Source: Amphiscolops sp. MND2022 (lineage: Eukaryota). From it: a stretch of DNA of 64,000 nt. The position numbers were made by a program, and so were the translations under genes. The notes under the pieces are model-generated. The model had not been told where the DNA came from. It made no database searches and was given only the letters and a program-made list of their open reading frames with translations. Positions within the stretch are counted from its first letter, which is position 1. Each line of letters starts with the position of its first letter. Positions 3,548 through 46,381 of the stretch are shown one piece after another. Location: assembly GCA_964187785.1 (NCBI GenBank), contig OZ076417.1, positions 20,770,001-20,834,000 of the forward strand. The letters are read 5' to 3'.

Positions 3548-5920
3548 TAGAATTTATCATTACCTTTTTCTTCAATATTCAATCAGCCGTTAGATACTCG
3601 TTAGATTTTTCGTTCAAAGTTTTCGATTTTTTAAACTACGGCGGGGGGGGGGGGCTAATTTTGTATCTTCAGTACTCTTTGAAGGCCTTGCTATATACGA
3701 AGCACAAGTACGAAAAAGGGAAATATATCACAAATTTTCACAGTTTAGTGTGATGATTTCATACCCAGTTTTCGTAGCGAAAGTTCTCGGGTTCAGTAAA
3801 ATTTGAAAATTTGGGGTTACTTTCCTAGTCTCTGATATCGGCTTGCGAATTCGTTGTGTCGAAAGAACTTGACCTTGCATGTGATCATCTAGCCAGCCAC
3901 GGTTTGATTAAGTTATGCATACCTTCTATTGTTGGTCCCCTCTTGATATTGTAGTCGGACACTTCTGAGGGGGTCTTTCAGAAAACCTCTGCTGATCATG
4001 AGTAATGGCCTCCGTTTTGAAGATCAGGATTAATCTGCTCGGCAGTTGAATAGCTTAGTGGCTCAGAAATAATACCGAAAGATTTGAGATCAAGAGGCCT
4101 TGGAGAGATAAAGAGAATGTGTGCAGGTATAAGAGATAAAGAGAATGTGTGCAGGTATAAATGCAATGAAGTCAAACCGAATTCCAGAAAATTCTGCTAT
4201 GAAATGAAAGAGGATAATTCGGTATTTTCGAGGAGTAATTCGACGACACATTGTTTGAATGCAAAGAGAGTTACTTGAAATTGAAGGTTGTACTGTCTCT
4301 CTATGGCCACCATGAAAATCTTTAGAGAACTGAAGTTTGTATTGTTAATCAAAATTAAAATAACAATGAAAGTTGAGGAAAATTATTATTAACCGCCAAG
4401 TCAAAACTTGATCACACAAACATTAAAAATGACTCATGATATGAATAACCAGGCCTTTTCGAGAGTATTTTTACCGAAATCGGAGAAATATTTCCAGAAT
4501 ATAAAATATTTTACATGTCCGGGAATCGAACCTGCGATCTCAATAATGCCCATAGCGAACTGAATTAACCATCGGCCAAGCGGACTTAACATTTGTTTGT
4601 TTTAATTTAACGATATTGCTACTGCAACATCCTCCGGGCCCAAGAAGGTGAGAAATGTTTTACTATCAAAGAAACAAACTTTTTTAAAAATTTTTTTTCA
4701 TTTTTTCGGAAATGTTTTTACATGAAATTTATTTTTTTTTCATACATGTCCATGCAAGAAGCTTAAAGGAAGTCGAGGAAACAAAACGTTGTTTATTCGG
4801 GAAGTGGAAGGACGGGTGCGAGTTTGATTATTGGGCGAACAAGGTTACCAGATGCTGTTCGCACTTCGGCGGACCTGGCAACGGCATCTGTGCCGAAGTT
4901 AAGCTTTACAACACGAGCTTTTTGGAAAACAGGCGATGTTCTTATTTATATAACTTTCAATTAAACATACTTTTCTTTACTTCCGCGGTTAGTAGAGGGG
5001 CATGTGTATGTGAAAGGGTTGGGGAATTAAATTTGAGAAAGCAATGTAGGAAAAATGCTGGGATGGACAAAAAACAGATTTGCGTTTTTACTGCCACTTC
5101 TCGGCCAAATTCTCAACGAGATCAACTTGTCAAAGAGTGCCTCGCATATTACTTCAGAGTGAAACGTGTCGTTTCAAGGCTGAAATGAAATGTTCACTAT
5201 AGTTTCAAGAAAGATCTTCTGTGGAGGCATTTCAACTTCAGAACTCATCCTAACTCTTTGATGCTTCAGCAGTTGTAGATGGTAAAAATTATTATTTTCC
5301 AATTTTGCAGCAGCATATAAAATTAGGTATCACGTTTGAACACTTTTACACCAGCAAATGCGGAATGATATTGTTCATACTATAAAAGAATCTTTCGAGC
5401 GGAAGTTTGAATAGGTATGTAGCTAATTGTATGAAATGACGTCATCAAAGTAAAGTGAACAAGTTTTTAGGAATTATCATGTAGCTATTTCAACTCTGAA
5501 CAAGCGAAACAGTTCTAGTGTCTCACTAACTACCTTTCGAACAGATCCATTGAAAAGAATTCACACAAAAATGTTTGATAAATTGATTTACACTCTTAAT
5601 TATAACAGCAGGATTTTAGTTACCAAATACTCATTAACAACTCTATGGAAAGTTAGCAAACGACAATATTCAAAGATTTCTTTTCCATCAAAGTTTAGAA
5701 ACATTATAGCATTAGAATTGAGCCGAACATATGACTACCGATATGGCTTTTTAAAATTTTTTAAAGGTAACAATATATCCGTGAAAAAAACCGCTATTAA
5801 ATATTTCGTCCGAACAATTATTTCGTGCCACCAAAAGAATTTGAAGTTTTGGACTCAACGTGGATTTTTGGCTCAATTGTACACTTCAAATGCGTTTCAC
5901 ATTCCAATTGGTGAAGCCAT

Positions 5921-6044
5921 TCATAGCCTGCTTTTGATGCTCTCCGGCACGAACAATAAGTCTTTGAATTCTTGTGAAACTGTGCCTTCTCTGAAAATGA
6001 CTCGGAACAATTCAGTCACTATCTGGCTGTGGTCGGCGTATAAT
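5921..6044 (-). CDS. ANK-NUDT9 gene, alternative (distal) terminal exon 16b
   Basis: Acceptor gggacag|A TTA TAC; phase-2 start; (R)LYADHSQIVTELFRVIFREGTVSQEFKDLLFVPESIKSRL*. LYADHSQ matches the NUDT9 C-terminal LYASHSQ motif. Confidence 0.6.
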
Positions 6045-7125
6045 CTGTCCCGGAATGACCAATTACAATCAATTTTCCAAAAAACTACACTTAACATCAC
6101 TTTAGTTACAAAAAGTTACCAAAAATGTCCATTTTGGGAAAGGCTTCACAATAGATTTTTAAATCTAACAAAAGCTAAGCAATGCTTGATTGACTTTAGG
6201 CCTATTAAAAGGTAAAATGTTCAGCAAATGACGATGAAGAGGACTGCGAAAATGTAACCGTGAGGGTATTTCTTGGCGTAACTCGTTCTTTTGGAGATCC
6301 AATAGCGGGAAACTTTCTTCAATTTCATAAACTGACCAACTCAAGACAAGTATGATTCATTGAAACCACATTAACAGACGTATTTCAATCAATGGTGTGA
6401 TTCATAAGTCATTTTCATTATGAGTAATGCAATTTAAGATTTTTACCCCATCCCCTCTCGCACGCATAATTGAGATAACATTGAAAAATTGGCATAGGTA
6501 GGTAGCTGATTGTACGTAGTGACTTCATCAGAATAGAGTGAACTAGAGTTTCTTTAGGAATTATCAAAATGTTATATTATTATTCATTGAGAAAAAATTC
6601 AGTTCTTAAAGAAGTTGGAAGGAGGAGCCACGAATTTTTCCACAGGTAGAGCTATTTTCTCTGGAAAATCTGAACAAGCAAAACAGTTCAAGTATTTCAA
6701 TAACTGCCTTTCACACACATCCAATAAAAATAATTCACACAAAAATGTTTTCGATAAATTGATTTACAGTCTGAATTATAACAGCAGGATTTTATTTACC
6801 GAATACTTCATTAACAGCTTTATGGAAAGTTGGCAAACGACAACACGCATTCAAATATTCTTTTCCATCAAGTTTCAAGAAAAATATATAACATTAGTAG
6901 AATTGAGCCGAACATAACTACCGATATGGCCTGATTTTGAAAAGTCTGAAGAAAACTGAATCTATCTGTAAAAAAGCCATTTAATTTTTCGTCTCAAAAA
7001 ATTATTTCGTTCCACCAACAGAATTACCGGAAATTTCACCCTTTTAAAAAAACTCGACGTGGATTTTATTCGGCTCAATTGTACAATTCAAACTATTTGC
7101 TTGACAGTCCAAATTGCGAAGCCAT

Positions 7126-7246
7126 TCATAGCTTACTTTTGATGCTCTCCGGCACGAATAGATCTTTGAATTCTTGTGAAACTGCGCTTTCTCTGGAAAT
7201 GACTCGGAACAATTCAGTCACTATCTGGCTGTGGTCGGCGTATAAT
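7126..7246 (-). CDS. ANK-NUDT9 gene, proximal terminal exon 16a
   Basis: Acceptor gggacag|A TTA TAC; phase 2 fits the AG|GC donor at 9219; (R)LYADHSQIVTELFRVISRESAVSQEFKDLFVPESIKSKL*. Confidence 0.75.
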
Positions 7247-8267
7247 CTGTCCCGGAATGACCAATTACAATCAACCTTCGGAGAAACTACAGTTCATAAG
7301 CACATCACCGTGACTTAAAGGCTGCTAATCCCTAACTAAGGATCGCAAAATAGGATAATTGCGACGGATGGTATTGATCAGTTCATACTGGCTCTCGACA
7401 GGGACCAAAAAAAACCAGTTCAATAACTCGACGACCGATTAATCATTTGTGATAATATTGCTAACCACTTGCTAGGTATATTATTCAGCTATTTGCACAT
7501 CTATTGCATGAACAAAATACACTCATACACGTGCGCAATGCAGTTTATACAATAGTTTAAGGAGAGAACTGAACCTCTATTTGCAAGAAATGGAAAGAAT
7601 TGAACTTTAATTTGCAAGAAATAATTTTTTAGCTTTTAAATAAGCTGCATGTAAACTAAGCTAGCATTTAACAAGGTGATTCCTTTCATTCTTTTTTTTC
7701 TCATGCGTTTAAGGGACTGGAAAGACAAATTGAGTGTTTAATATAATGGTTACAATCGCCTTAATTAGCAGACTTCCTGATATTAACCGAAAACCGAGTC
7801 CCCAACCTTTGCTAGAAATGGATGTCTCGCGTATTAAGATAAATGAATAGAAATAATAGAAACTCCCTTATCAAAATTATATAATTATATTGATGTAAAA
7901 CTGTTGAATGTCTTCAGGAAAGGAAGAAGTGCCCCTGCCAAATGAACAAAAGTTACAAATTATCTGCCAAATGTTACTAATTGTCTAAAATGAAGTTTCA
8001 CATTGCAATTCAGTAGTAAATACATTCAAAGAAAAATGAAATAAGGAAATTTCTTCATTATTTGTAAACCTGCATTTCAAATGCCAACAAAATTGTAAAA
8101 CGTTTGTTTAGTCGATTTTCAAATAACCTGGATGATAGCAGAATTCAGAGCTGTTTTTGTTTTGGTCCATGTTTTTACAAATAAAGGTTGTTTATTTCTT
8201 ACCCTATTTTTCATACTACATACGGAACTGCTTAGTAATATTAGCTAGTTATTAATTGAATCATTGT

Positions 8268-8508
8268 TATTTTCCGACCCCTCATTTTAAAATGGGGGAG
8301 GAAAATCGTCATCTGTGTTGCGTTTTTTTCCAAATTCTGCCAAATTTGACTCACCACCTCAGGTGGTGAGTCAAGTAACTATAGTCAAGTAACTTGACTC
8401 ACCACCTCAGGTGGTGAGTTAAGTAACTATAGTATAACTATAACTATATGTCTAGTGGGACAGCAGAAAAGGGAGGAAAATATCCCGGTGCTTAGCGGGC
8501 GTCTTGTT
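8268..8508 (+). mobile_element. HINE-like element family D with internal palindromes
   Basis: 5' ttattttccgacc and 3' gggaggaaaata (imperfect inverted pair), then hairpin cccg-gtgcttag-cggg and cgtcttgtt; internal 29-nt palindrome at 8346-8374 repeated at 8394-8422. Confidence 0.5.
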
Positions 8509-9218
8509 TAAATTCATTGTTTCACCATTGATGTGGTGGTATTATTTGGAATTGAAATGAACACCGAATATTGAATGCATATAAGTGGTGTAAGTTAGTG
8601 AAATTCTGACATTCCACTTATTGCAAATTGTGGATCGCAATACTTGTGATAAGTGGAAATTTGAAAAAATGACGGAATCGTGGAAAAGTGCATTTTTGGA
8701 CCAACTTCCAGTTCTCACTTAATTACGCGCCTTGACTAGTTTACACTATTTTCCATTCCACTCATTGACACAGCTCCACCTTCCAGTAGACCATCTTGTC
8801 CGATTTACGATGAATGACAATTTTACGTATTACACAGATTACGCTGCGTGACTGAAATCTATTTTAACGGGATGTGTATCTTAATGCTTTAGTTCCAAAA
8901 AACTATTAAAAATTTGTACTTTTTTGGGTTCAAGTATGTTTTCCAAAAATGAACGGAAAATGGCATTTTTATTAAATTTCCAAAGAATTTCTAAATGTCA
9001 CTTTCGAGCTTCCATCCACATTTTGATTATTATGAAAAACTCGTTTTAGGTGCTATTGAAGTCTTAATGTCATTGATTTCTTTGATTGCTTCAACTGATG
9101 ACATAATAATCCGAACTTTTACTGTCAAAAATATTCATTTTTTGTTTCAAAATGAGCCGAAACTCCGTATTAGAGGCTCAGAATGTTTTCAAAGCGTATG
9201 TGTGTGCGTTGGTCATGC

Positions 9219-9391
9219 CTGTTGGCGTCGAAAGAGGCGTCTAGGGTGACCCAAGCGGCCCCCACGGCATCGTCGCCTGCCTGCAACTTGCGGCCCAGGT
9301 CTTCCTCGCTGTGGAAGTGGAACCAGAAGGCTTGTGTCTCCATCCACGCGTTGTCTGTGTTTCTAGGGTCGTTCACTACCATCGAGACTAT
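9219..9391 (-). CDS. NUDT9: ANK-NUDT9 gene exon 15 (NUDT9 domain)
   Basis: Acceptor atccag|ATA; IVSMVVNDPRNTDNAWMETQAFWFH...LQAGDDAVGAAWVTLD matches NUDT9 DDPRNTDNAWMET and AGDDA motifs. Donor is non-canonical AG|GCATGA (phase 2); otherwise reads through to a stop at 9170. Confidence 0.9.
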
Positions 9392-9460
9392 CTGGATAAG
9401 TAGAGACCACAACTACTACACAATTTAGATTGCGAATATAAAAGCATCATATAAAAGATC

Positions 9461-10397
9461 AAAAATATGCCCCTGCGGGGCACAGTATTATTTCTGCTTT
9501 AGGCTTTCATGTTCCATAATAGAAGCATATCTGGAATACCAATACACTCCTGTTTATTCATTATATAGCGCAAAATTAATCACTGTACAAGTTTATACTG
9601 CGTTTAAATCATATCGGACTAAAGCAAACATAACTACCAAGCGTATAGGAAGTTTCGCATTCGCATTTTGGAACTTTTTCCTTTCCCCCCCCCCCACACT
9701 TTTCAAGATGATGTTTTTGCAATTAATTATACCTCAATTGCGTTTCCAATGAAACAGTTCAGTTTTAAATTTATTCTCAAGGTGATAGTTTAGGATTCAG
9801 ATACAAACTTTGTTCACACTTTTTCCCTATGTAGTTACGCATTTTTGATGAAGAAATCAACAGCTTCCTGTTTTGAGTCATCAATAAACACTCAATACGA
9901 ACATAATTAGTCAAATTGTGTGAACAATGTTTTGTTCAAGCGGAAAACTACTCTAACAGTGTGGAGACAACAAAACAAAGGAAAAGATTTATTCGAAGAA
10001 ATATTGAATGATATAGTCAAATATAATCTTTTATGTTGAGTTTGTTTTCTTTAAAAAGTGTGGGGGGGGGAAGGAAAAAGAGCCCGCATTTTAATTCAGG
10101 CCAAGCTCTCGGCGAACGAATAATTAACACTCGTTCGTTTCATCTCAGTAACTCGGCGTACGAATAATTAACATTCGTTCGCTTCATCTCAATAACTCGG
10201 CGTACGAAAGCACAAATATCACTCGCTCGCTTCATCGCACGAGAATCGAATCATCGTCGGCAGCTTGAAATTTAAATCTCACGCTTACACTCACTGCCGA
10301 ACAAAATATCTGAATTTTTCAGTAGATACAAAAATTTTACTGAAAAAGTGACTTTCAGATTTCAATATTATTCCCGCGTTGCAGAAATAATAAAAAC
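9461..10397 (-). mobile_element. HINE-like element family B (other copies about 18815-19250, 36970-37500, 37822-38240, 38950-39660)
   Basis: Perfect 12-bp subterminal inverted repeat (tattatttctgc 9486-9497 / gcagaaataata 10381-10392), terminal hairpin gcccc-tgc-ggggc (9469-9481), internal roughly 40-bp tandem units (aactcggcgtacgaataattaacattcgttcgcttcatctcaat). Confidence 0.65.
9670..10084. mobile_element. MITE with GG-starting poly-C/G TIRs and 8-bp TSD, nested in family B
   Basis: TSD cgcatttt at 9662-9669 and 10085-10092; roughly 33-bp imperfect TIRs; empty site visible in the copy near 37185. Confidence 0.85.
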
Positions 10398-10690
10398 TGA
10401 TAACTTGGGCCTAAAAGCAGCACTAAAAACCGGAAACTTTTGCAAGTGAAGGACTAATTTTCAAAACAAAACACCGAATCGCAAAATGGATGCTCGTCTG
10501 TTAATACAGTATCGTGATCTTATTAATTTTTCCATTCAATTAATTTTTTCAACGCATGTATTGTTATTTAAATATTCAAATTTGACAAATAGAGGAGAGC
10601 TTACCCCTATTCTGCATTAGGGCTCAAAGAATAATATTCTTTATAATCAAAACTTTTAATTTTTCAAATCAAGAGTCGTTCGTGACTAAC

Positions 10691-10858
10691 GGGAGCGTCT
10701 ATTTTCTTGTGTTCCACGAAGCGCTTCACCATCTCGTCTCTGTGCTGCTTCCTCTCCTCTGGGGTGAGTTTGCTGTGGTCGTTGCCCTCTAGCGCCTCTT
10801 CGCAGAACTCTCGGATGGCTGTGCCCGACAACTCATTCTCGCCTGGGTCCACCATGCC
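10691..10858 (-). CDS. NUDT9: ANK-NUDT9 gene exon 14 (Nudix box)
   Basis: tgtcag|GGC ATG GTG...GCT CCC|GTTAGT; 168 nt, phase 0-0; GMVDPGENELSGTAIREFCEEAL. Confidence 0.92.
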
Positions 10859-11199
10859 CTGACACACACACACATGAAACATTTCTTGCTTCACTAGGGC
10901 TACCATTAGTGCAAGTTTTCTATGTTCTTGAAAATGAAATTTGAAGAATTTTTTCATAAATTGGTAGAAAACAATGCCTGCACATAATACCGGCGCGAAA
11001 GTTGCAAACTACATTTGTACTGCAACATTTGAAAAACTTTGGTTTTCTTTCTGAAAGAACGTTCCTACCATTGGCAATAAGATGAGATATTCAACATGAT
11101 GGCAACTATTCAAAGGCGGTCAGAAACGGAAACAAGATTTTCGTTACTCTTCAAATTTGTCATGCATTAGTGCATGGAATAAAAACTGTTTTCTTAATA

Positions 11200-11371
11200 C
11201 AGTGGAAATCGCTTAAATGGGACACGCGTATAAGAGACAACGCTTAATTGGCAAACATTTCGGTCCCGGCTGAAATAAAGCAGATAGCGCCCGCAACTGA
11301 TATAAGAGACAACGGATATAGTAGACAAGAATACCCAGTCCTGAGGCGTCCCATATAAGCGGCTTTCACTG
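11200..11371. mobile_element. Tc1/mariner (pogo-like) MITE
   Basis: TA-flanked; imperfect TIRs cagtggaaatcgcttaaatgggac / gtcccatataagcggctttcactg. Confidence 0.7.
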
Positions 11372-11426
11372 TATAGATTTTTCGAAAGATATATTTTTTC
11401 GAAAATACTTTATGTAGTTATCTTAC

Positions 11427-11502
11427 CCCCGGTAGTGCATACTGGCCAGTATCTGATCGCTTGATGAGGGCCAATTTTAGCACATTCTTCTCTGTTGACC
11501 AA
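11427..11502 (-). CDS. NUDT9: ANK-NUDT9 gene exon 13
   Basis: ttgcag|T TGG...CCG GGG|GTAAGA; 76 nt, phase 2-0; WSTEKNVLKLALIKRSDTGQYALPG, equivalent to the NUDT9 LQFVAI..RxDxxEWAIPG segment. Confidence 0.88.
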
Positions 11503-12400
11503 CTGCAACACAACAAACAACGCATCAAGAGGCACTTCAAAATTCCGTCTCGTTTAAAAGAACAACATTTACATATAAAACTCTTTGAGACCCGTATTAT
11601 CGAACAAAAGTCAAAAGGTAGAAAACCTTCAGATGATGCGAACTCCTCGATTGAAACTACGAGCAGAATAAAGATGTCTGTGTTGATTGGTTAATGTCTC
11701 ATTTCAACTCAGTACAAACTACATTTCAAACCGATATCAAACTGTGCTGTTTAAAGAAATTTTAAGCTGTTTTAAAAAAACTAGATTATTTAAACTCATT
11801 CGGTGATTTTTTGGTCAGATACTAGTTAACATAAAGCGTGTAGTTTTCAATTTCAGTTCAAACTCTGGTACTCCAGTTTTTTGTTCAAACGAAGGTCGAA
11901 ATTGTTTAACCGGTCAACCAGTGCGTGCTGCCTGAACCAGCGTGAACCATCGAAGTCGCGAAGAGACGCGCGCCCTGAACCATGTCAAGTACGCATAAAA
12001 AATCTGGTAATTTAGGAAACGAGTTTTAGTATTAGTCCTATTTCTGTGCGGTTTTCATTTTTTTAAAAAAATTAGTTCATTCATCTTTTAGAATAATAAA
12101 TATTGTACACTTTCAATATTATTCTGGGTTTTTGGTGCCCTTGTTAGTTCGCCACATATAAGTTAGTCCGTAAAACTTAGCCACATTTAAGTTAGCCACC
12201 ATATAAGTTCGCCATTAAAACATAAATTCAATTTCCATTGGCTGAAATGTGGGGAAGATGAACGTGGCGAACTTATTATATGGTGGCTAACATAAACGGA
12301 CACGGGGTTGGTTTTTAACTATTTCTGATAGTATTGAGCATAGTGTTTCCTCCCTCTCTCACTAATAGTGAACAAACTAGTGAATTATGTAGTGACAAAC

Positions 12401-12564
12401 CAGGTGACGATGGGGTCGGCGGCGTGATTGGGTCCGTACTTGCCCAGCAGACCCCTGCCTATCATGCCCGTGCGGCCGTTGGGGTTCAGGGGCACTCCTG
12501 TCACGGGGTGCAGCTGGTAGTCGCCCAGATACGACACCCTGTTGATCTCCACTGCTTTGTCCGG
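12401..12564 (-). CDS. NUDT9: ANK-NUDT9 gene exon 12
   Basis: ttgtag|CCG GAC...ACC TG|GTTTGT; 164 nt, phase 0-2; PLNPNGRTGMIGRGLLGKYGPNHAADPIVT matches NUDT9 NPxGRTGxxGRGLLGRWGPNHAADPI. Confidence 0.95.
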
Positions 12565-13144
12565 CTACAAACATCAACTCAACATAATTTGAGAATAATT
12601 TTAGATTGCCTGATGATATTGTCCCGAAGATATTAAATAGTCAATGGCCGTGAAATTCGCCTACCGTCATTTAGGTAATTTGCATCGCTGAGAATCGAAT
12701 AAAAGGCAGCGAATAATGACACATACGAATTACCCAAATGATTATGCATGTCTTCGGATCTCACAAATGAGGTCTCGCATACATTTGAAAAAAATCCAAA
12801 TTATCCGGATACGAATCAACCTGAGTCAACCGTATATAAAATAAGATATCTTTAAAGAGATATGAAATAAGATAACCGTATATAAAATGAAATGGACTGA
12901 AAGCGCCTGGTGACTTATAGGACAAAGTTACAAATCAGAATAATAAAGTAGAGACTCTTCACAACTCTTCACACATGTCTATAGATTCTTGATGTTTTCC
13001 CTGCTAGATATTTCAGTATCTTCAAAACTACGGGGTCGAGGAGGCTAAGAAAAAGAGTTGTGCTCAATCGAAATCTTGTATCCATTTGCAGAGCTAGGAA
13101 CACCCTTTTCACTTCCTTAAAAGAAAGTAGTCACAAGTACTAAC

Positions 13145-13250
13145 CCCGTGGTTGGGGTGATAGTTGTGAGAAGCCACTTTGTTGAACTGGAAATAATGTT
13201 CTCGGTCTTCTCTGAAACAGCATGAACGTAAAGCTGAACTTCGAGGTACG
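13145..13250 (-). CDS. NUDT9: ANK-NUDT9 gene exon 11
   Basis: catcag|C GTA...CAC GGG|GTTAGT; 106 nt, phase 2-0 bridges its neighbours; VPRSSALRSCCFREDREHYFQFNKVASHNYHPNHG contains the FN expected in NUDT9. Confidence 0.75.
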
Positions 13251-13597
13251 CTGATGCTATTAGATAGGTGTTGTTACAGTACGAAAAAGGAATACAAAAG
13301 GATGTTTTCAAGACAGGCTGATGTTTTCAGACGCTTAGACCGCTGATTTCAAAATCGCTATTTCGCTGAAAAAGGTTTTCAACTTTTTTTGCGAGAATTT
13401 TTCATACTGTGTGGGTTTTACAAAGGTAAGGTTGGAATTTCCGTGTATACTAAGAGGAATTTTTGAATTTGGAGAATCTATTAGTTGCAGCTAATTTGAA
13501 TCGTTGAAAAAAATTCTGCGCGGGCGCTAAATCGCTAATTAGCGGTGTCAAAACTGTTTTTGAAAAGACATCAAAGTGGCAAAAGGGGTAAAATATT

Positions 13598-13905
13598 ACA
13601 AGAAGCCCGCTAAGCACTGGGGTATTTTCCGCCTTGTTCTTCTTATTCTGTTTTTCTCCGCCAATTGCATTGTTTTCTGCATTATACCACCACATACCAC
13701 TGAGGTAGGTATGAAGGACTTGATGACTCATTTTCTCATTTGCCTCATGAAATATCTAATGATGATTTAACCCGATCTGCATCCACTACTTGACTATTTT
13801 AGTTACTTGACTATTTATGGAGATCGTGGAGATTTGAAAGGATTTAGAAAAACGCAACACAGATTATGATTTTCCTCCCTCATTATATGTGGGCGGAAAA
13901 TGAAA
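13598..13905 (-). mobile_element. HINE-like element family D
   Basis: acaagaagcccgctaagcactgggg end with tattttccgcc; inverted partner gggcggaaaa at 13891-13900. Confidence 0.5.
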
Positions 13906-13941
13906 AATATATAAACGTTCAACAAAAAGAGAGGAGCTAAC

Positions 13942-14123
13942 GCAGTCATGCCGTATATTTCGGGGTCTGCCCAAATGGGTGGGTAGTAGCACATGTTCTT
14001 CTCGTAGCCCCCGTCCTGTTCCACTCGATCAGCCAACTTCTTTGCGTTCTGCTCACCTTCTCTGCTCATCGTGTACAGCTCCAGGGCACTGAACATTATG
14101 GGTGCATAGCCTTCTAAAGGAAC
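13942..14123 (-). CDS. NUDT9: ANK-NUDT9 gene exon 10
   Basis: ctgcag|GTT CCT...ACT GC|GTTAGC; 182 nt, phase 0-2; ends YYPPIWADPEI (NUDT9 WADP motif). Confidence 0.85.
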
Positions 14124-14937
14124 CTGCAGAGAAACGAGAACGTGAGGCCCAAAAGGCTTCTTGACGCCAATAATTTTCCATTAAAATCTATTCATTATTA
14201 AAAAAATTATTCATGGCATTTTTGTTCTTCCAGTAAAACTTCGGAATCCTATGGAGAGCTTTTGGTCTTGATTTCATTCGCAATTTGAAAATCTAGTCGA
14301 TGTTATTGATACTTTGTAGTTGCTTAGATAATCTTAGAACGGATAGGTATTTAGCAGAAATCAAAGTGAAAAACAATAAACGAACACGCAACTTAGCACT
14401 CAAACTGAGCGTGGGCTCTCAGATAAATATGCTACGGATTGGTTTCCAAGAAAATTGCGAAAAACGTCACAAGACTGAAAACTCTCCAAGACTTTTAGAC
14501 TCAAAACTGAAAACAAAAAAACAATGGGAGGAAGCAATAGGGTGAAAAGTCGCACATTGCCAAAACAATATCAAAGGAGAGACCCATTGGTCTCACAGCT
14601 TTGTAACTTAGGTAGGGGTAACATGATGAAGAGGGACCCTTTGGTCGCTTTGAATGCACTTTAGATCTTGGGCGAAAATTAGAAATTTGCAGAACTATTT
14701 CGGTCACTTCGAGAGACTTGAAAAAAATATTTAAAAACCGAAGAACAGTCACTACAATAGTAGAGTTTTCATAGTAGGCGGTATTTAATACAGCACCGAC
14801 TAAGTACTTTTCTTAAGTAGTTGCAATACATAAAAGTTTGTTCGAAAAATATGAGATTGTAGCAATGCCACTACGCTGTATGATTCTAAAAGGACTCAAA
14901 GAAGACAGAGGAACTCTTAAAAAGTAGCAACACTTAC

Positions 14938-15107
14938 ATTCCAGGGTCGTTTATCGTGGGGCACGGGAAACCGGGCAAGGTATTTGCTGTTTTTTAGCAA
15001 GACAGGCACCTCGCAAGCAGGGCCAGTAGATTGAGATGCTCCTTTCGTTGATTCCTTTTTCTTCTTCGAATCCTTTCTCCCAGCCGTGGGCGAGTCTGTC
15101 ACCATAC
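14938..15107 (-). CDS. NUDT9: ANK-NUDT9 gene exon 9 (start of NUDT9 domain)
   Basis: ttacag|GT ATG GTG...TGG AAT|GTAAGT; 170 nt, phase 1-0; RFPVPHDKRPW resembles the NUDT9 N-terminal RxxVPxxKxxW segment. Confidence 0.88.
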
Positions 15108-18100
15108 CTGTAACACATGCATCTTCAGTTATACTCATTAATGACATGTTATGACTCATTATAACAAGCCGGCTACGGCCCAAGTTCGCGCCCCGCTCAA
15201 TCTTCAAAAGGGTAACGTTTCTTGAATATGCAAGGGACACTTTTGTCAAAAGTATATTAAATTCACAGTGCCCAAAAAGACCAAAAAGGATATGCATAAG
15301 ACTCGAACACAGTTTTTCTCTGACTTGAAACATCAAATAGATTTTTGGAAAAAAAATTCGAGAAACTTTTTTCTTCGGGCAAAAGTCTCATAGTGCCGAA
15401 AAAGCTTTACGCTCGCCAAACGCTTTTTTCAGGCCGAAAACATTCATCAAAGTACCCTTTGACCGAGTGAAAATTGTACCGAAAAAAATGCACTGTCGAA
15501 AAAAACGTAGATCTCTGTTCCGCAATCATTGACAAAACTCATCAGTTCCACAGGATCAAAAAAATTCCAAGAAAGTCTCACTGCGCCGACTAAAAACAGG
15601 GAACTAAGCACAATTCAACACTTCGTCGGCTGGAACTGGAACAAGACCATCGCTAAGTATCTGGATATTTTCGACCCTGGATTGTTTGAGCAACATGCAT
15701 TTATCAAAATTGTTCGAATCTTGCACAAAAAGTTCAAAATTGCCAATTCACTTCAGTGAAGTGAAATTTTTTTCTTCAAAAATTTCAGATTTAGCCATGA
15801 ACATAAAATTTTTAGCGTAAAATCATAAGTAATGAAACACTACCATAGAGCTCTTTACAAGCTTCCGAAAACTAGGAGAACGCAACGCGGAATTGAGCAA
15901 GTGTGCATTTGAAAATTCTAAATACTAAAATTCTAAAACACTGTAAAAAAAACTTCAATAAGAAGCGGCAGTTGCAATAAAGTACAACTTTATAACAATG
16001 ACTGCGTAAAAAGTATTGAAAAACAACAATTTTTCTTAAAGTAGAAGTTTCTTCGACTTTCATTGAGATTTTTGCTTCAAATTCCTGTGAGCAGTATTTG
16101 AAAATATGGAAAATCCCAATTTAGGCCTAGATAATTCAAATAGCATTTTTTTTCTAAATTTTGACAAAGTTTCAACGCAAAAACAAAAAAATCTCATTCA
16201 GGGAAATTTTGAGCGTATTTTTTTTCCGAAATTACCCTAAAAACCTAAAAGAAATGATTTTTGGATGTGATCGAGGCAATAAAATTTGAGAATCAATGTC
16301 TAATCAGCCAATGAGATTTTAGAATCGCTGTGACTTCGCGCTGCTCGGTCGCATTCTTTTAGAAGACAACTGTAGATATAATAAAGATCAACTAGATCAA
16401 CTGTCTCAGTTAGAATCAAGTCCGAAAAAAAAGAATTGCTGCTCACGCGGGAGTTTTGAGACATGGCGGCTAGTACAGCAAGTGTCAGTAAACATCCACA
16501 CTTCAGTATGGCAAGTATACACATGGGCGGAAAAACTGCTCCGTTATTCCGAAACGTCAGTGTCCCGAAAATGAATTCACGTTCCATTTCGAAAAAAATG
16601 AAAATCAATTTATAGCCTAATTTTACATTGTTTAGGGCGTAATTTTACACAAAACCAAACCTTGCCAAGCTTTACCAGCTGATGAACTGTAAATTTATCT
16701 AAAATTTGCCGAAAAATACAAGAAACTTCCCGCAACTATCTCAATGAATGATACGTTTGACTTATGTTCTTCCTTTTTGTTACAGTTTATAAGCTTTGAT
16801 TTCAAGGCAAGAGACCTAATAATTAACCTCTTCTTCTGTTGATTGACTGAAATTCGATATACAGTTAGATTGAATCTAATTGTGAATTCACTTTCGGACT
16901 AATGAACAGCAAGCAGTCGGAAAAATTATCAAACGGAATTCCTGTTCGAGCGTGTGATCAGCAGTTGTTCCAGGTGACTTGATGTGGATGAAAAACTTGA
17001 TATTCATTGGCCCAAAAATTTTCAAAAATCCAAATAACTCTGAGCAGACATTGATTTCTTTTGCCTTTAAAGCGCCCATGGTATCCGAAAAAGCGTCGTT
17101 TTAGAAAAGCAGAACTGCGGCGTCCACCCCGTGGAATTGGGGACATTAACTTTCTTCTTTAAGTTAGAGGTAACAAAAGTTGGGCCCGAATTCAAACATA
17201 CTCCTCAATCAATGACTTGACACATATCACTTGAAGAAGTTTCAAATTCTCGGGTTCCGGAAGTTTAATGAAACAATTACGGATGAAACATGGATCAACT
17301 TTTTCTTTTGTGAAAAACTGAAAGCTGCAAAAGTCGGGTCGTGGAGCGAAATTGCGAAGTAGTCAGATAATGCAGACAGGCTCGAAAACAGTAAATACGT
17401 TGTACTTGCAGTCTCGTATATATTCAATTTTGGTTCAGCTGTCGTTTGAAAAACAGCAGTATTTTTACTTAGAAAATTTTTAAAGTTGCAAGTTTGCAAA
17501 AAGTCCCCAATGAAAAACAATTGAAATGATTTGAATACCTTCAGATATGAGTGATTCTGTAAAGCAATGAACAGATCAAATTTCAAAAAGGTTATCACTT
17601 AAACACAGATCAGAGGATTAGGCATTAGTAATTGGTTAACATGCTTTTAAGTGAATGAAGGTAGTGATTCGAAATCAATTACGAAACCATACAAACATTT
17701 AGGTCTTCATTAGAGATAGCACACATTACACAATAGGTCGAAGTGTTCAGTCTTTCAGTATTTGACCACAAAACTGCTTATCAGTACACATCAGAACGAA
17801 ACCAAAGCAAAACGGTCAAATTTGATATGATTAATGCCAGCGAAAAACAAACTTTTCTGCCTATATTTTAACAAATAGTGAATATTTATTCTCAGCCACC
17901 GGGTTTTTATTCACAGGAATTAGGAGTATTTTCCCTAGCCAGTAACCCTGACGATAGCCATGTTTATTGTTGTAATGAAACAAATTGCCGTCTATCTTAT
18001 GCTTATAACTAGCCCATATGCTTATAATTCACTTTCACAAATGATTTACACAATACCCCTGTGCTCCTACCAATACCCATGTGTTTCCCATTCAAACCGA

Positions 18101-18217
18101 GTCTGTTGAAAGTCTTACATGCCCCAGACGTCTGTCTAAAAAGTTCTCATGGTCTGCAAAACTACCAATTACCAAGAGCTAGAACGTGCAAAACAAGTTG
18201 ACTGAAGTTACAATTTA

Positions 18218-18816
18218 AACAAGACGGGAACGTCTAAAGTCGGCGCTATATCTAAGCATCAAAAAGTGCAGCTTTTAAAATGTGCGAAGGACGTTCTCAT
18301 GAAAAACTCTTCTTCGAACCTCCTCCTTAGTAAAACGCAATAAAGTTCGGATATAACGTCAGAAACTCGGATATACCGCTTTATTCCGTCAAAATTTCGG
18401 ATAGTATTGAAAAAATATTTGTGGGTATATATTGAGAATACTAAACCAATTTCAGATTAAAAAAGAATTTTGAAACAGTCTCGTACTGGCGAAAAACTTG
18501 AAAGGGGAGACCCTTTGTGCTTTTTGAAACTCCAGTTTGCTGCACAAGATCAAAAAAATTGAAGGGAGGACCATTTGAAGACAAAAAAATTCAAAAGGGT
18601 TGACCCTATAATCTCGCCCGGTTTTGTATTTTACGTTGAAAATGGAATAAATGAAAGGGACCCTTTGCACTAACTTAGATGCGTTTCCGCTTGCCGGTCC
18701 AGTAGTTTAGTAGTTCTGTCAAACGTGTCAACTACGCATACATTCTGTAGTTTGACGGAAAAAACTAGTCACTGCAATAGTCGGGCTTTTTTTCTTAAAA
18801 ATGCGCCGACTGAAAA
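18218..18816 (-). mobile_element. HINE-like element family A (many more copies, e.g. about 28470-28950, 29579-30222, 41540-42192, 50264-50884, 51325-51663, 53744-54433)
   Basis: Subterminal inverted repeat agtcggcgc/gcgccgact, T-run at the 5' end, 3' hairpin agacg-ttcc-cgtct then ttgtt; internal modules aaaggg..ccctttgg and tcgcatagtgccgaaaa. Confidence 0.7.
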
Positions 18817-21800
18817 TAGCCCCTGCGGGTATAGCATTATTTCTGCTTTTAGGCATTCATGTTCAATAATAGAATCATATTTGGAATAACTAAACACTCC
18901 TGTTTAATCATTATATAGCGCACAATTAATCACTGTACCAGTTTACACCGCCTTTAATTCTTCTCGGACTAAAGAAAATATAACTACTAAGCGTAGACAA
19001 GTTTCGTATTCGCATTTGAATGCAGGCGAAGCTCTCGGCGGACGAATAATTACCACTCGTTCGCTACATCGCACGAGAAACGAATTGTAGTCGGCAGCTT
19101 GAGAAATGTAAAACTCACGCTTACACTCACTGCCGAACAAAATATCTGAATTTTTCAGTAGGTACTCGTATCGCTAACAAGAGGTGACTGAAAAAAAAGT
19201 TGCATAGTTCAGATTTCTATATTATTCCTGCTATCACAGAAATTTAAAAAAACGATGAGGGAACGGCCCAAGTCAGTGCCCGCTCAAGGCTGAAAAACAG
19301 CAGTCTGTTGAACATGCAAAGGAAAACTACTGTAAAATTCTCATCAATCTTACAGTGCCGAAAACGTCCGCAAGGATCACCCGTTGGTCTCGTTCACGCA
19401 TGAGAAAACGTTGTACATCCCGGGATTCAATCCACGAACCCCGGCTTCGCAGTCATGCACTCTATCCTTAAGAACAGGTGACGTGGAACCGACATGAAGT
19501 GAAATTAAAGAATGTTCAATAGAATCTGTCAGTTTACTGGTCTTTTAAAAAGCCACTACTATGATCTGCGTTTAACAGAAGCGCCGACTACAAATCGGAG
19601 TTTAAAAGAATGACCCTTTTCAAAAAAGACCCTTTCAGAAAATTTTCAAACCGTTCTACCTATCAACAAGCTGAGAGCACTTCAAAGTCGGCTCAAACAA
19701 TGTATGAAATTTTCATATCTGCCGATTTTTCCATTTCGTCGCATTTTAGTCTGTTTTGTGTTTGGAATATACGAATGTTTAATCTTTATGAAGGTGGGTA
19801 CTCAATGATCTAGTTTCAAAGAAGTGCCAAAAAATATAGAGGAAACAGTTCAAATTACTCTAAACTAAAATAAAAACACTGCACACTAAGTACCAAAATC
19901 AGTCTTTGATCGATTAAAGAAACTATCAAGATAATTTTGAGCCCCATGACGGCCTGTTACAGTGCTTGGAAGAAACAGATCGTGACAAAATTAACACAGA
20001 GGCGAAACCGTGCTTCGCAAACACTTGCGAAGAAAGTTGCGAACTTTTGAAGAAACCCAAATAAGCAATATCATACGGAGAGCCAAGGGTAAAAGGACAT
20101 TATTGTTAAAATTTCATCAATTTTACGCCAAAAAATCCCGAAGGGATACACATAAATCTCGAAAACAATTCTTCTCCAACTGGAAACAACAGAAAACCCA
20201 TCTTTCTCAACCGTAAACCTTAAAAAAAAAACAGAAAATTGAGGGAAAAAAATTTCGAATTTTTTTATGAAGGTCTCCGGCAAGTCGCATAGTGCCGAAA
20301 ACCTTTAGTAGTGCTTTATGCTCGCAAAACGTTTCGTTTCTAGTAAAAATGGAGAAGGCTTCGATGAAAACAAATTAGAAAAAAAGTCGCATAGAAAAAA
20401 CAGCGGTCTTTAAAAAAAATCGGATATAGCGTGCTGGGCCTGAGAAAATCTAATTTTAAGACAAAAATTATTCGATTTGAAAAATCTCACAATGCCGAAA
20501 ACTGTAAAAGGGGGCACTTTGAGATTTTTTTAACATCCATTCTGTTGCAAAATTTCAAAAAAAATTGAAGCGAGACTTGAAAAATTTTCAAAAAAAACAA
20601 AATGAGAATTTTCAACAGTCTCAGTGCCGAAAAATCTGAAAGAAGGGACCCTTTGGGATTTTTTAACATTCGTTCTGTTGCAAAATACCAAAAAAATGAA
20701 GGGAGGAATCTTTGGTGACATGAAATAAAATGCGAAAAAAAGTCACAAAGCCGAAATAACATGCACAAAAAATTTTGGTCAAGGGCGAGACTCGAACCCA
20801 CGTCCTTCTGCTTGGCAGACCTCAAAAAATCCTAATTAACCTTATGACAAGTGCCAGAAGTTGCGACTTGCACGGCCACAAATTCAGACTATGCGACTTG
20901 CAGTCTGAAACGAGAGAGTTGTCGCGCGGAAAAAAAAGCACCCGCACTTTCCCATAACACTTGCTTATCGCAAGTGTAATGAAAGTAAGTAAAATTGAGG
21001 AAGTATCATTATGAAGTTTTATTGATTTTTAGGAAGCTACTGATGGTAAAGATTGCGCCATTTTGAGCCAATGATTTTCAATGGAAGGGAGAACTACTAT
21101 AAACAAAGGTTCGCAAAAGCAGCACTTGACGAAGTGTGGAAAATGTATTGAAGAAGAGCTATGCGAAGCAGGTGTAAACGTGTTCACATTGCTGGAACTC
21201 TCCTAAGTTCAAATATATACAAAATTAGAACATTATAACGAATCTCAAACTAAGCCAAAATGATGCTGAAACTACGGCTGCACCAGAACTGGAATATTCT
21301 TCGACGTACCTATTCTCAGTTCCGAGAAACAAATCCAAAATATAAGAAAATCGATTTTTTTTTCAATTTTCAAAGTTATGTCTGTCGTCAAAAAATTCAT
21401 TTTTCAAAATTTTTTAAACCAAAGCCAGGAAGATTTCAAGGCGGTGACCTTTTTCAGTAGCCAGGGATTCAGTAACTCGATCGAACCAAGGTTTGAGACA
21501 TTTGGCGGAGGAGAACAATTGATTTTAAAAAGTCTGACAATGAGAAGAAATGTAAACGAATGGTACTTATCGCAGCGCAGCACTTATGGTAACAAAAATC
21601 AAATTACTGAGAAGGAGTTACACTTTTTGGCACATGGACATTTTGCAAAGATTGCTCGAAAATGCGTAAGTACGTTTCTCTTCCTCATTTCTAAATTAAC
21701 CTCAAACAAACTAGAGTAATGAAACGAAGTCGCCTGGATGCGTTGTAAATGAATTACGATGTTGCGAAAATACTGGAAAAATACGCAGAGAGTCGAGTCT

Positions 21801-22266
21801 AGAGAAAAGCTAGTGACTGTAAAGGCTGAAACTTTTTCAAGTTGAAAACGTAAAGAGTAAAGGAGTGAAGAATCAGAAACTGTGAGAGGTTCAAAAAAAC
21901 CTCAGATCAGTTTGTTTTTTACTCTCTGATCACCAAAAACAGCAGGAATGAATTTTTCAAGGAATGAATCAAGCAAATGGATCATGCACTATTGATACTG
22001 TGAGTTACGGAGTCCTTTTCCAAAAAACCGGTTTCAAAAACAAACGGGGTTCAACAGAATCAACTTGGAAATCGCTATCACCCCCAGAAGCAGAGCTGAA
22101 CAAAAGAATAGACTAATTCACAGCTCAAAGTACAGGAAACGCTCCAAATCTGAACGTTGTTGAGCCAAAAACACGAAGATTTTCGAATATTCAGTCGCCG
22201 AAAAGAGAAAAATCTTTCGCAAGTTTACAGAATATAATTTACTAACGTCTTCGGCGCATTGTTGAA

Positions 22267-22320
22267 GTACTGCCAGAGAGGTCTCTACTGTAGGTACTGC
22301 CAGAGAGGTCTCTACTGTAG
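22267..22320. repeat. 27-bp perfect tandem duplication
   Basis: gtactgccagagaggtctctactgtag twice with no spacer. Confidence 0.9.
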
Positions 22321-25300: not shown

Positions 25301-26776
25301 TGACAGTAAACTGATGAGCAGAAAAAAACTAGCTTAATTATTTGAATTTTAATTTCTCAAAATTATAGACATCACACAAAAAATAATCGTAAGCATGCAC
25401 ATTACACGAAGGAAGTGAAAGTACATTTAACTTCGGTGTTCTTAAATTTCATTGTATACGTTCTTCACCTTTCAAAACATGACGAAATAATGAAGTTAGT
25501 GGCTATTAATCAGGGTTGGCTTTTCATCGGATCAAAAATTTTTAATCCTGTTAAAATTATTATATTAGGCAAGATCAAATTGACTAAATCAGCACGCAGA
25601 ATACAGATTTTTGAAAAAAAATAAATGCAAAAGTTGGATCAGAAAACAAGTTTTGGAATTTTTCAACATCGCATTGATTTTTAGTCTTCGAATGAACAAA
25701 ATTTAAAGCGATGAGAATGGAACGAAAGTATGAAACTGCGGATTCGTAGATCAAATAACTCATCCGTGTCAAAAAACTGGACTATTTTGACCAAGTTTAA
25801 TCAAAGATGATTAGAACATTTTTAATAAGAAAGATTGTAATCAGCCAACTATTGGCTATCAAAACTTTCTATCAACATCGGCAGTAGAATTAGGTCTCAA
25901 AAATTGTAAAATCTCCTGCTTAAATTTGGAAATTCATCATCAGCATGTATCGATTATAATTCTTTCAACAGATATCTGGATATTATTCTCACAAATAAAT
26001 TATCCGGCAACGTCGAAAAAAAAAACAGCTTCGATTTTTGCTTTTCACTTTCCCAATCATCACAGTTTCTACAAAACTTTGCATCTATTCTACTACATTC
26101 GCATCCCTCTTTTCCGGGGGTTACGTTGAATAACTTGAAACCGTGCAACAAGGTTTTAACAAGGGAGGGGGACTGTACCTTCACAATTCTTATACAGCCA
26201 AAACAAGTGGAGGTCAATTTTATTGTTAGTTGGGGGTCCTCATTACAAGGGGTAGACAATATTGAAAGTCCAAAGTTCCACGGGATTCCTTCGGGAGACC
26301 AAATAGGGGGTGAGCGGGTTATGTTTGAAATGGATGCACCACAAAATGGTCAATTTATTCTAACTTTCTTACATGCCGGTTTAAAGAGACTAAATTGGCA
26401 GTCGGGGTAAAAGATACGCATTGACTATAAGCGGTTTCTTATATTCGGAATCCACTGTATGGCCGATTTTGAAATGTAACAAAATTACCAATCTATAAAG
26501 TAGGTATCATTTTGATCGAGTCAGTCATCTCAATTACTTTTGTTGGCTGTGTATGTCTCAGCCTTCCTCCTTCCGGAGCACTTGGCGTCCTGCCAGGTTT
26601 ACATTAGTCAAAGCATCGGATGCGCCGCTAGTCAAGTAATGGCACATCGCTCCGCTTCGCTTCCGCATGTGGGGCACCATACGTACTGTGTCTCCACAGC
26701 TGATCACATCTTTTTGTAACGCTTTAAAAATCGACCCTTTGTGTTACGTTTTTCATATCGGCCGTTTTGTTATGCC

Positions 26777-27213
26777 CAGGGGTGTTCAATAAATAATTAT
26801 GGGTAAAAATAATTATAATAAAAACATATTTATTTTTACACTCAAATGAATAAAAATTATTTTTGGATCTGTTAAAATGAAAATAATTATTCTTGAGATA
26901 ACTAAAACTAAGAGCGTTTAATTCAACATATCGTCAGCCAATTAAATTCGAAAATACAGACATCTTGAGCTTAATTCTAGAAATACCTTTGCCCAGTACC
27001 TTGGGCTACTGACTCAAAAGGTCGAAGAGTCCATTAAAAAAGCCCCGTCGCCGCGTTTTTGGGCTGAAATTTAACTTTTTGTTGATACTCGTTTTTCGCT
27101 GAGATTAAAAATAATTAAGAAAAATATTAAATTATTCATTTTTTCCACCCTGAAAATGAAATAATTCATTTTTATGCAATAATAATATCCGAATAAAATA
27201 TTGAACACCCTTG
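26777..27213. mobile_element. Non-autonomous hAT (MITE)
   Basis: TIRs caggggtgttcaata / tattgaacacccttg; 8-bp TSD gttatgcc / gtcatgcc (7 of 8 match). Confidence 0.75.
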
Positions 27214-27296
27214 GTCATGCCTAATAATCTTGTTGTTGTCATTTTGTGGCGTCCCCGTTCAAAATAAGAGTCTAGATGAATTTGATTTTCACTTAC

Positions 27297-27342
27297 CCAA
27301 TCTCTGCTTGATCGTCTTCATTTCGTCTTGGAGGTTAACAAT
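27297..27342 (-). CDS. ANK-NUDT9 gene exon 8 (coiled-coil bridge)
   Basis: Strong polypyrimidine acceptor cttcag|ATT and donor TTG G|GTAAGT; 46 nt, phase 0-1, exactly what links exon 7 to exon 9; IVNLQDEMKTIKQRL continues the heptad begun in exon 7. Confidence 0.8.
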
Positions 27343-41291: not shown

Positions 41292-41328
41292 CAATGTCAT
41301 CAAGGCCGGAATACTTCGCTTTCTCACG
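41292..41328 (-). CDS. ANK-NUDT9 gene exon 5
   Basis: tttcag|CGT GAG...ATT G|GTAAGG; 37 nt, phase 0-1 bridges exon 4 and exon 6; REKAKYSGLDDI. Confidence 0.75.
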
Positions 41329-46375: not shown

Positions 46376-46381
46376 ACTCAC

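What the first reader, a model, noticed from the sequence alone, without database searches (positions are those of the whole stretch)
5921..7246. Tandemly duplicated last exon gives the NUDT9 domain two possible C-termini
Seen: two copies of the LYADH exon, both with intact acceptor, open frame and stop. The first 16 codons are identical; the rest differ by 7 substitutions (4 non-synonymous) and one in-frame 3-nt indel, while the flanks are much more diverged. Inference: better conservation of exon than flank suggests both are used as alternative last exons with different 3' UTRs. Recent gene conversion could give the same pattern.
Basis: partly seen in the sequence, partly recalled or inferred. 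Interest (0 to 1): 0.7.

Follow-up and report, generated by a model that had tools for sequence, protein, structure and literature searches.

The report
Duplicated last exon of an acoel gene
An acoel worm gene that joins ankyrin repeats to an ADP-ribose-cleaving NUDT9 domain carries two tandem copies of its last coding exon, and both copies have been kept intact by selection, so they most likely serve as alternative protein ends; this is an ordinary though well-preserved case of a known way to make gene variants.

Summary
On the minus strand the last coding exon occurs twice: B at 7246-7126 and A at 6044-5921. Both have the same acceptor, the same phase, an open frame and a stop. The first 16 codons are identical. 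The rest differs by 7 substitutions (4 non-synonymous) and one 3-nt indel, and the 3' flanks are about 80% alike.

It is not a mis-assembly. Short-read contigs bridge A to B, and a second, diverged copy of the locus (contig C1475) has the same A/B pair.

That second locus gives the main new evidence:
- The A/B-specific differences are shared by both loci.
- Each exon differs between loci by only 3-4 of about 120 nt, against 19-22% in the flanks. Non-synonymous changes number 1-2 where about 15 are expected.
- Gene conversion cannot explain this in the 3' half of the exon.

Both copies therefore look translated, most simply as alternative last exons spliced from the GC donor at 9219. Both ends finish in a peroxisome-type tripeptide (SKL, SRL). 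Only B keeps AATAAA signals.

No RNA data could be reached, so use of either junction is inferred, not shown. Three other acoel genomes have no intron here and a single end. This is a new member of a known kind, of modest interest.

The parts
5921..49958 (-). Whole gene: ankyrin repeats plus a NUDT9-type Nudix domain (about 16 exons)
   Evidence: tblastn of the Convolutriloba macropyga protein P0151 and S. roscoffensis P0153 finds collinear exons from 49958 to 5924. Pfam Ank scores 36 bits on 46483-46373, and the NUDIX box lies on 10858-10688. The homologue P0002 matches human NUDT9 1Q33 at E 1.6e-40.
9219..9391 (-). Penultimate coding exon (IVSMVVNDPRNTDNAWMET...DASFDAN + 2 nt)
   Evidence: It is 94% identical to the C1475 copy.
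9217..9218 (-). GC donor of the last intron (CAACAG|GCATGA)
   Evidence: No GT lies within about 60 nt. The same GC is present on C1475 (GCATGG). The read-through frame is not conserved between the loci.
7126..7246 (-). Proximal last exon B: R-LYADHSQIVTELFRVISRESAVSQEFKDLFVPESIKSKL, then stop
   Evidence: It differs from the C1475 copy B2 by 3/121 nt.
5921..6044 (-). Distal last exon A: R-LYADHSQIVTELFRVIFREGTVSQEFKDLLFVPESIKSRL, then stop
   Evidence: It differs from the C1475 copy A2 by 4/124 nt, 3 of them synonymous.
7247..7291 (-). Duplicated intron tail upstream of acceptor B; the last 28 nt (7247-7274) are identical to those before A
   Evidence: Nearly invariant in all four copies.
6045..6089 (-). 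Duplicated intron tail upstream of acceptor A
6494..7125 (-). 3' flank of B (duplicated unit), probable 3' UTR
   Evidence: It holds blocks that are invariant in all four copies.
5411..5920 (-). 3' flank of A (duplicated unit)
6090..6493 (-). Unique 404-nt spacer between the two units
   Evidence: No second match in the window. It is present in the C1475 locus too.
7065..7070 (-). AATAAA 56 nt after stop B, kept in B2 and absent from A1 and A2
6791..6796 (-). Second AATAAA, 330 nt after stop B, kept in B2 and absent from A1 and A2
7064..7084 (-). Arm 1 of an inverted repeat in the B flank; it pairs with 6897-6917
   Evidence: I4. Both arms are conserved in all four copies.
5864..5881 (-). Arm 1 of the same inverted repeat in the A flank; it pairs with 5713-5730
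   Evidence: I8.

Best explanation
The terminal coding exon of an acoel ANK-NUDT9 gene, with about 45 nt of intron and about 700 nt of 3' flank, was duplicated in tandem. This happened before the locus itself was duplicated (C9 and C1475).

Both exon copies have since been kept as protein-coding sequence. The penultimate exon's single GC donor (9219) is most likely spliced either to the proximal acceptor (7246) or to the distal acceptor (6044).
- Splicing to exon B gives a C-terminus ending ...SKL and uses B's own AATAAA sites.
- Splicing to exon A gives a C-terminus ending ...SRL, with B skipped as intron and a longer or unconventional 3' end.

The two proteins share the conserved C-terminal helix of the Nudix fold and a PTS1-like tripeptide. 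They differ at four residues plus one extra Leu. The main difference between isoforms is therefore probably the 3' UTR and its regulation, not catalysis.

Shown: the duplication, its age relative to the locus split, and coding-type constraint on both copies. Inferred: splicing to both acceptors, B as the default, and peroxisomal targeting.
For: Structure.

Real in DNA: in four runs of one sample, the contigs 4890-5984, 6043-7196 and 7250-7772 break only at the shared identical core. The middle contig joins A's upstream side to B's exon.

Second locus: G000:C1475 carries A2 and B2 with the same spacing, about 1,201 nt.

Order of events: 31 informative sites group A1 with A2 and B1 with B2, against 10 grouping by locus and 2 crossed. 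Every informative site in the exon and in the first 150 nt of the flank groups by copy (A1 with A2, B1 with B2), and the 3-nt indel is shared.

Constraint between loci:
- The other coding blocks give dS 0.186 and dN 0.010.
- Exon A has 3 synonymous and 1 non-synonymous change (dS 0.13, dN 0.011).
- Exon B has 1 synonymous and 2 conservative non-synonymous changes.
- About 15 non-synonymous changes are expected if neutral (Poisson p = 2.5e-6 for A and 3e-5 for B).
- Exon versus flank: 4/124 against 89/397 for A, and 3/121 against 83/440 for B (Fisher p = 4.5e-8 and 4.8e-7).
- Neither exon has an indel, where 3.8 and 2.8 are expected.

All four copies keep a stop and an [S][KR]L end. Tandemly duplicated terminal exons chosen mutually exclusively are documented in Drosophila pip and PGRP-LC (PMC9013439).
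Against: - There is no RNA evidence at all. No RNA run holds the stretch, and no protein of this species is in the protein databases.
- Exon A has no AATAAA or ATTAAA for about 1,100 nt in the window and about 490 nt on C1475, whereas B keeps two.
- Both acceptors are identical and B is transcribed first, so A could be used rarely.
- The two predicted proteins are nearly the same, which gives no obvious reason to keep both.
- The counts per exon are small (3-4 differences).
- C1475 comes from the same individual and is of unknown status (paralogue or very divergent haplotype).
Confidence: 0.65

Rival explanations
1. Only the proximal exon B is used. Exon A is an untranslated relic lying downstream of the gene, and its good state is due to past gene conversion from B or to chance.
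For: B alone keeps the two AATAAA signals in both loci. B has the ancestral length and the SKL end seen in the nearest relative, L015. The first 84 nt are identical between A and B, as conversion would give. Some sites in the distal flank group by locus, which hints at conversion there.
Against: The A-specific residues and the extra codon are shared by A1 and A2, so no B-to-A conversion has touched the 3' half since the loci split. Yet that half shows 3 synonymous and only 1 non-synonymous change between loci. Over the whole exon about 15.7 non-synonymous changes are expected if neutral, against 1 seen. The stop, the frame and the S[KR]L end are kept in both A copies.
Confidence: 0.17
2. The two loci have divided the work. 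One locus uses exon A and the other uses exon B, so within the window's gene only one copy is functional.
For: Two intact gene copies exist. Duplicated genes often partition isoforms.
Against: If each exon were free in one lineage, about 7.8 non-synonymous changes would be expected in each. Only 1 and 2 are seen (p = 0.003 and 0.019). No copy has an indel or a stop.
Confidence: 0.1
3. Exon A is used, but as a non-coding 3' UTR exon or as part of a long 3' UTR of B transcripts. Its conservation would then reflect RNA-level signals rather than translation.
For: Several blocks of the 3' flank are invariant in all four copies, so RNA-level constraint exists here. The inverted repeat is conserved.
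Against: The changes in A between loci are mostly synonymous, with dN/dS about 0.08, like the rest of the coding sequence. That is the mark of translation. No phase-compatible donor was seen in B by eye.
Confidence: 0.06
4. The two blocks are alleles, or a collapsed or expanded repeat, wrongly joined by the assembler.
For: None found.
Against: An independent short-read contig runs from 6043 to 7196 without a difference in all four runs. The only linear path through the contigs is the tandem one. The same tandem pair sits on C1475.
Confidence: 0.02

Closest known systems
Tandemly duplicated, mutually exclusive terminal exons (Drosophila pip; PGRP-LC 3' variable regions), reviewed in PMC9013439
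   Same: Homologous last exons lie in tandem. Each has its own acceptor, stop and 3' flank, all served by one upstream donor. The copies are better kept than the sequence around them.
   Different: There are only two copies, and the encoded ends are almost the same. Use of both is not shown by RNA. The competing RNA structures known for PGRP-LC were looked for here and not supported. The distal copy lacks a canonical poly(A) signal.
Tandem exon duplication giving mutually exclusive internal exons (about 10% of animal genes; PMC9013439, PMC9741552)
   Same: Origin by local tandem duplication of an exon with its flanks. The frame and splice phase are kept. Both copies are under purifying selection.
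   Different: This is a terminal exon, so the choice is tied to 3'-end formation rather than to a downstream splice.
Human NUDT9 ADP-ribose pyrophosphatase (PDB 1Q33) and the NUDT9-H domain of TRPM2
   Same: The same Nudix fold. The duplicated exon starts at the family's conserved LYA[SD]HS C-terminal helix.
   Different: The acoel protein has an N-terminal ankyrin-repeat region, one extra residue in the Nudix box, and an S[KR]L end. From my own knowledge, human NUDT9 is mitochondrial. No PTS1-bearing NUDT9 was found in the literature search.

Membership tests
Alternative last exons made by tandem exon duplication | Two homologous exons in tandem, in the same orientation, inside one gene | tested here: met
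   Supported by read contigs and by a second locus.
Alternative last exons made by tandem exon duplication | Each copy has an acceptor, the same phase, an open frame and a stop | tested here: met
   True of all four copies in the genome.
Alternative last exons made by tandem exon duplication | Both copies are under purifying selection | tested here: met
   Between loci: 1 and 2 non-synonymous changes against about 15 expected, and exon versus flank Fisher p below 1e-6.
Alternative last exons made by tandem exon duplication | Each copy has its own cleavage and polyadenylation signal | tested here: inconclusive
   B has AATAAA at +56 and +330, conserved on C1475. A has none within about 490-1,100 nt. 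Acoel poly(A) signals have not been characterised here.
Alternative last exons made by tandem exon duplication | Transcripts exist with each junction, and never with both exons | not testable with these tools
   No RNA run holds the stretch. No protein of this species is in the databases.
NUDT9-type Nudix hydrolase | Nudix box with the REx2EE catalytic motif | tested here: met
   Exon 10858-10688 reads GMVDPGENELSGTAIREFCEEA. Pfam NUDIX scores 20.1 bits on the fragment, just under the 21.1 cut-off for a whole protein. It has one extra residue compared with human NUDT9.
NUDT9-type Nudix hydrolase | Full-length similarity to NUDT9, including its N-terminal domain | tested here: met
   The exons are collinear with P0153, P0151 and P0002, which carry PF25969 and PF00293. 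P0002 matches 1Q33 at E 1.6e-40. The enzyme activity was not tested.
PTS1 peroxisomal targeting signal | C-terminal tripeptide [SAC][KRH][LM] | tested here: met
   B1, B2 and A2 end in SKL, and A1 in SRL. L015 ends in SKL and S. roscoffensis in AKL, but Convolutriloba has no such end.
PTS1 peroxisomal targeting signal | Import into peroxisomes | not testable with these tools
   This needs a localisation experiment.

The most novel reading that the evidence does not exclude
The last intron and the pair of terminal exons arose together in this lineage. A partial tandem duplication of a formerly single terminal exon would have created a new GC-AG intron. The choice between the two identical acceptors would then be governed by the conserved inverted repeats in the 3' flanks, acting as competing RNA structures that also cover B's poly(A) signal. 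The evidence does not exclude this, because the intron is absent from three other acoels and from the same position in Lingula. However, every direct test for a relic copy or for docking-type pairing was negative.
Probability: 0.08. Interest if true: 0.55.

Novelty: new member of a known kind. Interest (0 to 1): 0.3.

Why it matters
It is a clean natural example of how a kilobase-scale tandem duplication, which is common in this genome, can be recruited as a second gene end and then kept by selection. The ANK-NUDT9 fusion protein of acoels is unstudied. Two ends that differ mainly in their 3' UTRs would point to post-transcriptional control of an ADP-ribose hydrolase that may be peroxisomal. 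For annotation, it warns that the gene has two valid last exons and a GC donor, which gene finders tend to miss.

Tried and rejected
1. Relic third copy. I asked whether the 5' end of the last intron is a decayed original copy of the LYADH segment. The local alignment of 9218-8900 against units A and B is no better than shuffles.

2. Vestige of the old exon upstream of the acceptors. This failed at the DNA level. It also failed at the protein level, with the in-frame KVDCNWSFRDR compared to six relatives. Neither score is above shuffles.

3. Docking/selector pairing. The donor-side ATGACCAA is complementary to TTGGTCAT upstream of both acceptors, and the A>G change on C1475 would keep a G-U pair. 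But the duplex energy is reached by 66 of 1000 shuffles, and other intron windows score better.

4. RNA evidence. The look-up of sequencing runs returned only four DNA-like runs of one sample. Three protein searches found no product of this species.

5. TE origin of the unit. The flank 5420-5900 has only the four copies, plus two short partial hits on C1475, so it is not a repeat family.

6. Counterpart of the 404-nt spacer. None was found in the window.

7. The look-up of encoding contigs had no record for P0153, P0151 or P0233.

Full report
**What is there**

Reading the minus strand shows a coding exon ending at 9219 (...WVTLDASFDAN plus two bases). Two copies of a short terminal exon follow.
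- Exon B runs 7246-7126 and exon A runs 6044-5921.
- Each copy is preceded by the same 28 nt ending GGGACAG. Each starts with one base that completes an Arg codon, continues LYADHSQIVTELFRVI, and ends in a stop.
- After the 16 identical codons there are 7 substitutions (4 non-synonymous) and one TTG indel.
- The repeat is larger than the exon. Unit B is 6494-7291 and unit A is 5411-6089, 81.5% identical over 638 columns. A 404-nt spacer without a counterpart lies between them.
- Within the window, the exon is better kept than the 3' flank: 7/121 against 71/412, p = 0.0007.

**The gene**

- tblastn with proteins found through the penultimate exon lays out a collinear gene from 49958 to 5921. 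It has ankyrin-repeat exons matching the 685-aa Convolutriloba macropyga protein P0151, followed by a NUDT9-type Nudix domain.
- Pfam sees Ank and the NUDIX box on single exons. The homologue P0002 matches human NUDT9 (1Q33) at E 1.6e-40 and also matches TRPM2 NUDT9-H domains.
- The duplicated exon begins exactly at the family's C-terminal LYA[SD]HS helix.
- The nearest named proteins are from acoels, so the genome is an acoel's. It is not S. roscoffensis itself, because the best exon identity to P0153 is only 73-82%.

**Splice sites**

- Only a junction after ...AACAG restores the D-x-N-x-LYADH spacing of all relatives.
- The donor there is GC (CAACAG|GCATGA), and no GT lies nearby.
- The second locus has the same GC donor. 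The read-through frame is not conserved between loci, so a read-through C-terminus is unlikely.

**Not an assembly error**

- Four runs of one sample hold the stretch. All are kept as short-read contigs, and none is on record as RNA.
- Laid on 4500-9500, the contigs 4890-5984, 6043-7196 and 7250-7772 match without a difference in all four runs (in X4 the first is shorter, 4890-5761). They break only at the core that A and B share.
- The middle contig joins the sequence upstream of A to the 3' flank and 3' half of exon B. The tandem order is therefore the only linear path.
- No variants are listed between 5200 and 7700.

**A second locus gives the key comparison**

- Searching the whole assembly found a 114.6-kb contig, C1475, with a collinear copy of the NUDT9 half of the gene. 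It carries both exon copies, A2 and B2, about 1,201 nt apart.
- Its version of the penultimate exon is also present in the reads, at about the same depth as the window's (places 9269-9332).
- Non-coding identity between the loci is about 79-85%, and coding identity is 93-97%.
- Over 882 nt of other coding blocks, dS is 0.186 and dN is 0.010. The two loci are therefore old copies, either paralogues or very divergent haplotypes, and both are under selection.

**What the four copies say**

Order of events:
- In a four-way alignment, 31 informative sites group A1 with A2 and B1 with B2. Ten group by locus, and 2 are crossed.
- All informative sites in the exon and in the first 150 nt of flank group by copy (A1 with A2, B1 with B2), as does the 3-nt indel.
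- The exon duplication is therefore older than the locus split. Since that split, no A-to-B conversion has touched the 3' half of the exon.
- A minority of locus-grouping sites in the distal flank, and the low A1-B1 distance there (12.5%), hint at some conversion further downstream.

Constraint between loci:
- Exon A differs at 4/124 nt (3 synonymous, 1 Arg/Lys).
- Exon B differs at 3/121 nt (1 synonymous, Ser/Asn, Lys/Arg).
- The aligned 3' flanks differ at 89/397 and 83/440 (Fisher p = 4.5e-8 and 4.8e-7).
- At the neutral rate seen at synonymous sites of the rest of the gene, about 15 non-synonymous changes per exon are expected. Only 1 and 2 are seen (p = 2.5e-6 and 3e-5).
- Even if an exon were free in one of the two lineages, the deficit remains (p = 0.003 and 0.019).
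- Neither exon has an indel, where 3.8 and 2.8 events are expected.
- Exon A in particular has dS 0.13 and dN 0.011, the same pattern as the undoubted coding exons.

All four copies end in S-K-L or S-R-L, a PTS1-type tripeptide.

**Relatives**

- Contigs of three other acoels were checked: L015 (an unnamed species nearest to this one), L016 (S. roscoffensis-like) and L017 (Convolutriloba-like). In all three the penultimate and last exons form one uninterrupted exon, and there is a single C-terminal segment within 10 kb on either side.
- In Lingula the nearest intron lies 16 codons upstream.
- The intron before LYADH and the duplication are thus specific to this lineage. Whether the intron was gained here or lost elsewhere cannot be decided.

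**How it most likely works**

- One weak GC donor faces two identical, pyrimidine-poor acceptors.
- Splicing to B, followed by cleavage after one of B's two AATAAA signals, gives the ...SKL isoform. Those signals lie at +56 and +330 and are conserved on C1475.
- Skipping B and splicing to A gives the ...SRL isoform, which has four other residues and an extra Leu.
- A lacks AATAAA or ATTAAA for about 1,100 nt (about 490 nt on C1475). Its mRNA would therefore have a long or unconventional 3' end.
- B is transcribed first, has the ancestral length and keeps the signals, so I take B as the default. This is inference.
- The two proteins keep the same helix and the same targeting-type end, so the isoforms probably differ mainly in 3' UTR-borne regulation.
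- Blocks of the 3' flank are invariant in all four copies, including an inverted repeat whose first arm abuts B's first AATAAA. This fits functional UTRs, but there is no compensatory change to support a structure.

**Comparison with what is known**

- Tandem exon duplication followed by mutually exclusive use is common.
- Clusters of duplicated terminal exons chosen one at a time are described for Drosophila pip and PGRP-LC (PMC9013439).
- This case fits that kind on structure and on selection. The defining transcript evidence is missing, and the poly(A) criterion is met only for B.
- Kilobase-scale tandem duplications are frequent in this genome. Besides the exon pair, the window has a 2.3-kb head-to-tail duplication and a 196-nt-period repeat. 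A second NUDT9 gene on C8 has a very young duplication of its own last exon.
- The raw event is therefore ordinary. What is notable is only its retention.

**Verdict**

There is strong indirect evidence that both copies are translated, but no direct evidence of use.
- It is a new member of a known kind, with interest 0.3.

Noticed in passing
L019:3260-7176 (G000:C8:9955259-9959175): A more distant, canonical NUDT9 paralogue also has its last exon (...LELYASHVTFIQRVCEMRSAYWPYSS, then stop) twice. The copies sit in a head-to-tail 1,957-bp duplication that is 98.6% identical. The distal acceptor reads TTTGAG instead of TTTCAG. This may be very young, or an assembly artefact.
   Followed up: partly
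window 30044-34676: A head-to-tail 2.3-kb duplication (30044-32355 / 32366-34676, 99.6% identical) inside the large intron of the ANK-NUDT9 gene. A 196-nt-period repeat lies at 48982-49634. Kilobase-scale tandem duplications seem common in this genome.
   Followed up: no
window 9217-9218 (minus strand): The last intron uses a GC donor (CAACAG|GCATGA), conserved on C1475 as GCATGG. The intron is absent from three other acoel genomes, and Lingula has no intron at this position.
   Followed up: partly
window 7064-7084 / 6897-6917 and 5864-5881 / 5713-5730: An inverted repeat (GTACAATTGAGCCGAA ... TTCGGCTCAATTCTAC) is kept in the 3' flank of all four exon copies. Arms of different copies can also pair with each other. 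In the B copies, arm 1 abuts the first AATAAA. No compensatory change was seen, and B2 has one unpaired change.
   Followed up: partly
window 7551-8533: An insert of about 1 kb in the last intron is missing from the C1475 locus. It is built of very high-copy repeats (contig depth 10^3 to 10^5 times that of neighbours) and includes a near-perfect hairpin at 8346-8436.
   Followed up: no
G000:C1475:97800-111300: A second intact copy of the NUDT9 half of the gene (dS 0.19, dN 0.01 against the window). It lies on a 114.6-kb unplaced contig that ends before the ankyrin exons would be expected. Whether it is a paralogue or a very divergent haplotype is undecided.
   Followed up: partly
L018:5332-7074 (Lingula anatina LFEI02000399.1): The Lingula NUDT9-like gene has two internal exons duplicated in tandem. 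Both copies are included in the annotated 387-aa protein P0222, which therefore carries the Nudix box twice.
   Followed up: no
window 10688-10858 (minus strand): The acoel proteins of this family have one extra residue inside the Nudix box compared with human NUDT9 (GMVDPGENELSGTAIREFCEEA against [21 protein letters not shown]).
   Followed up: no
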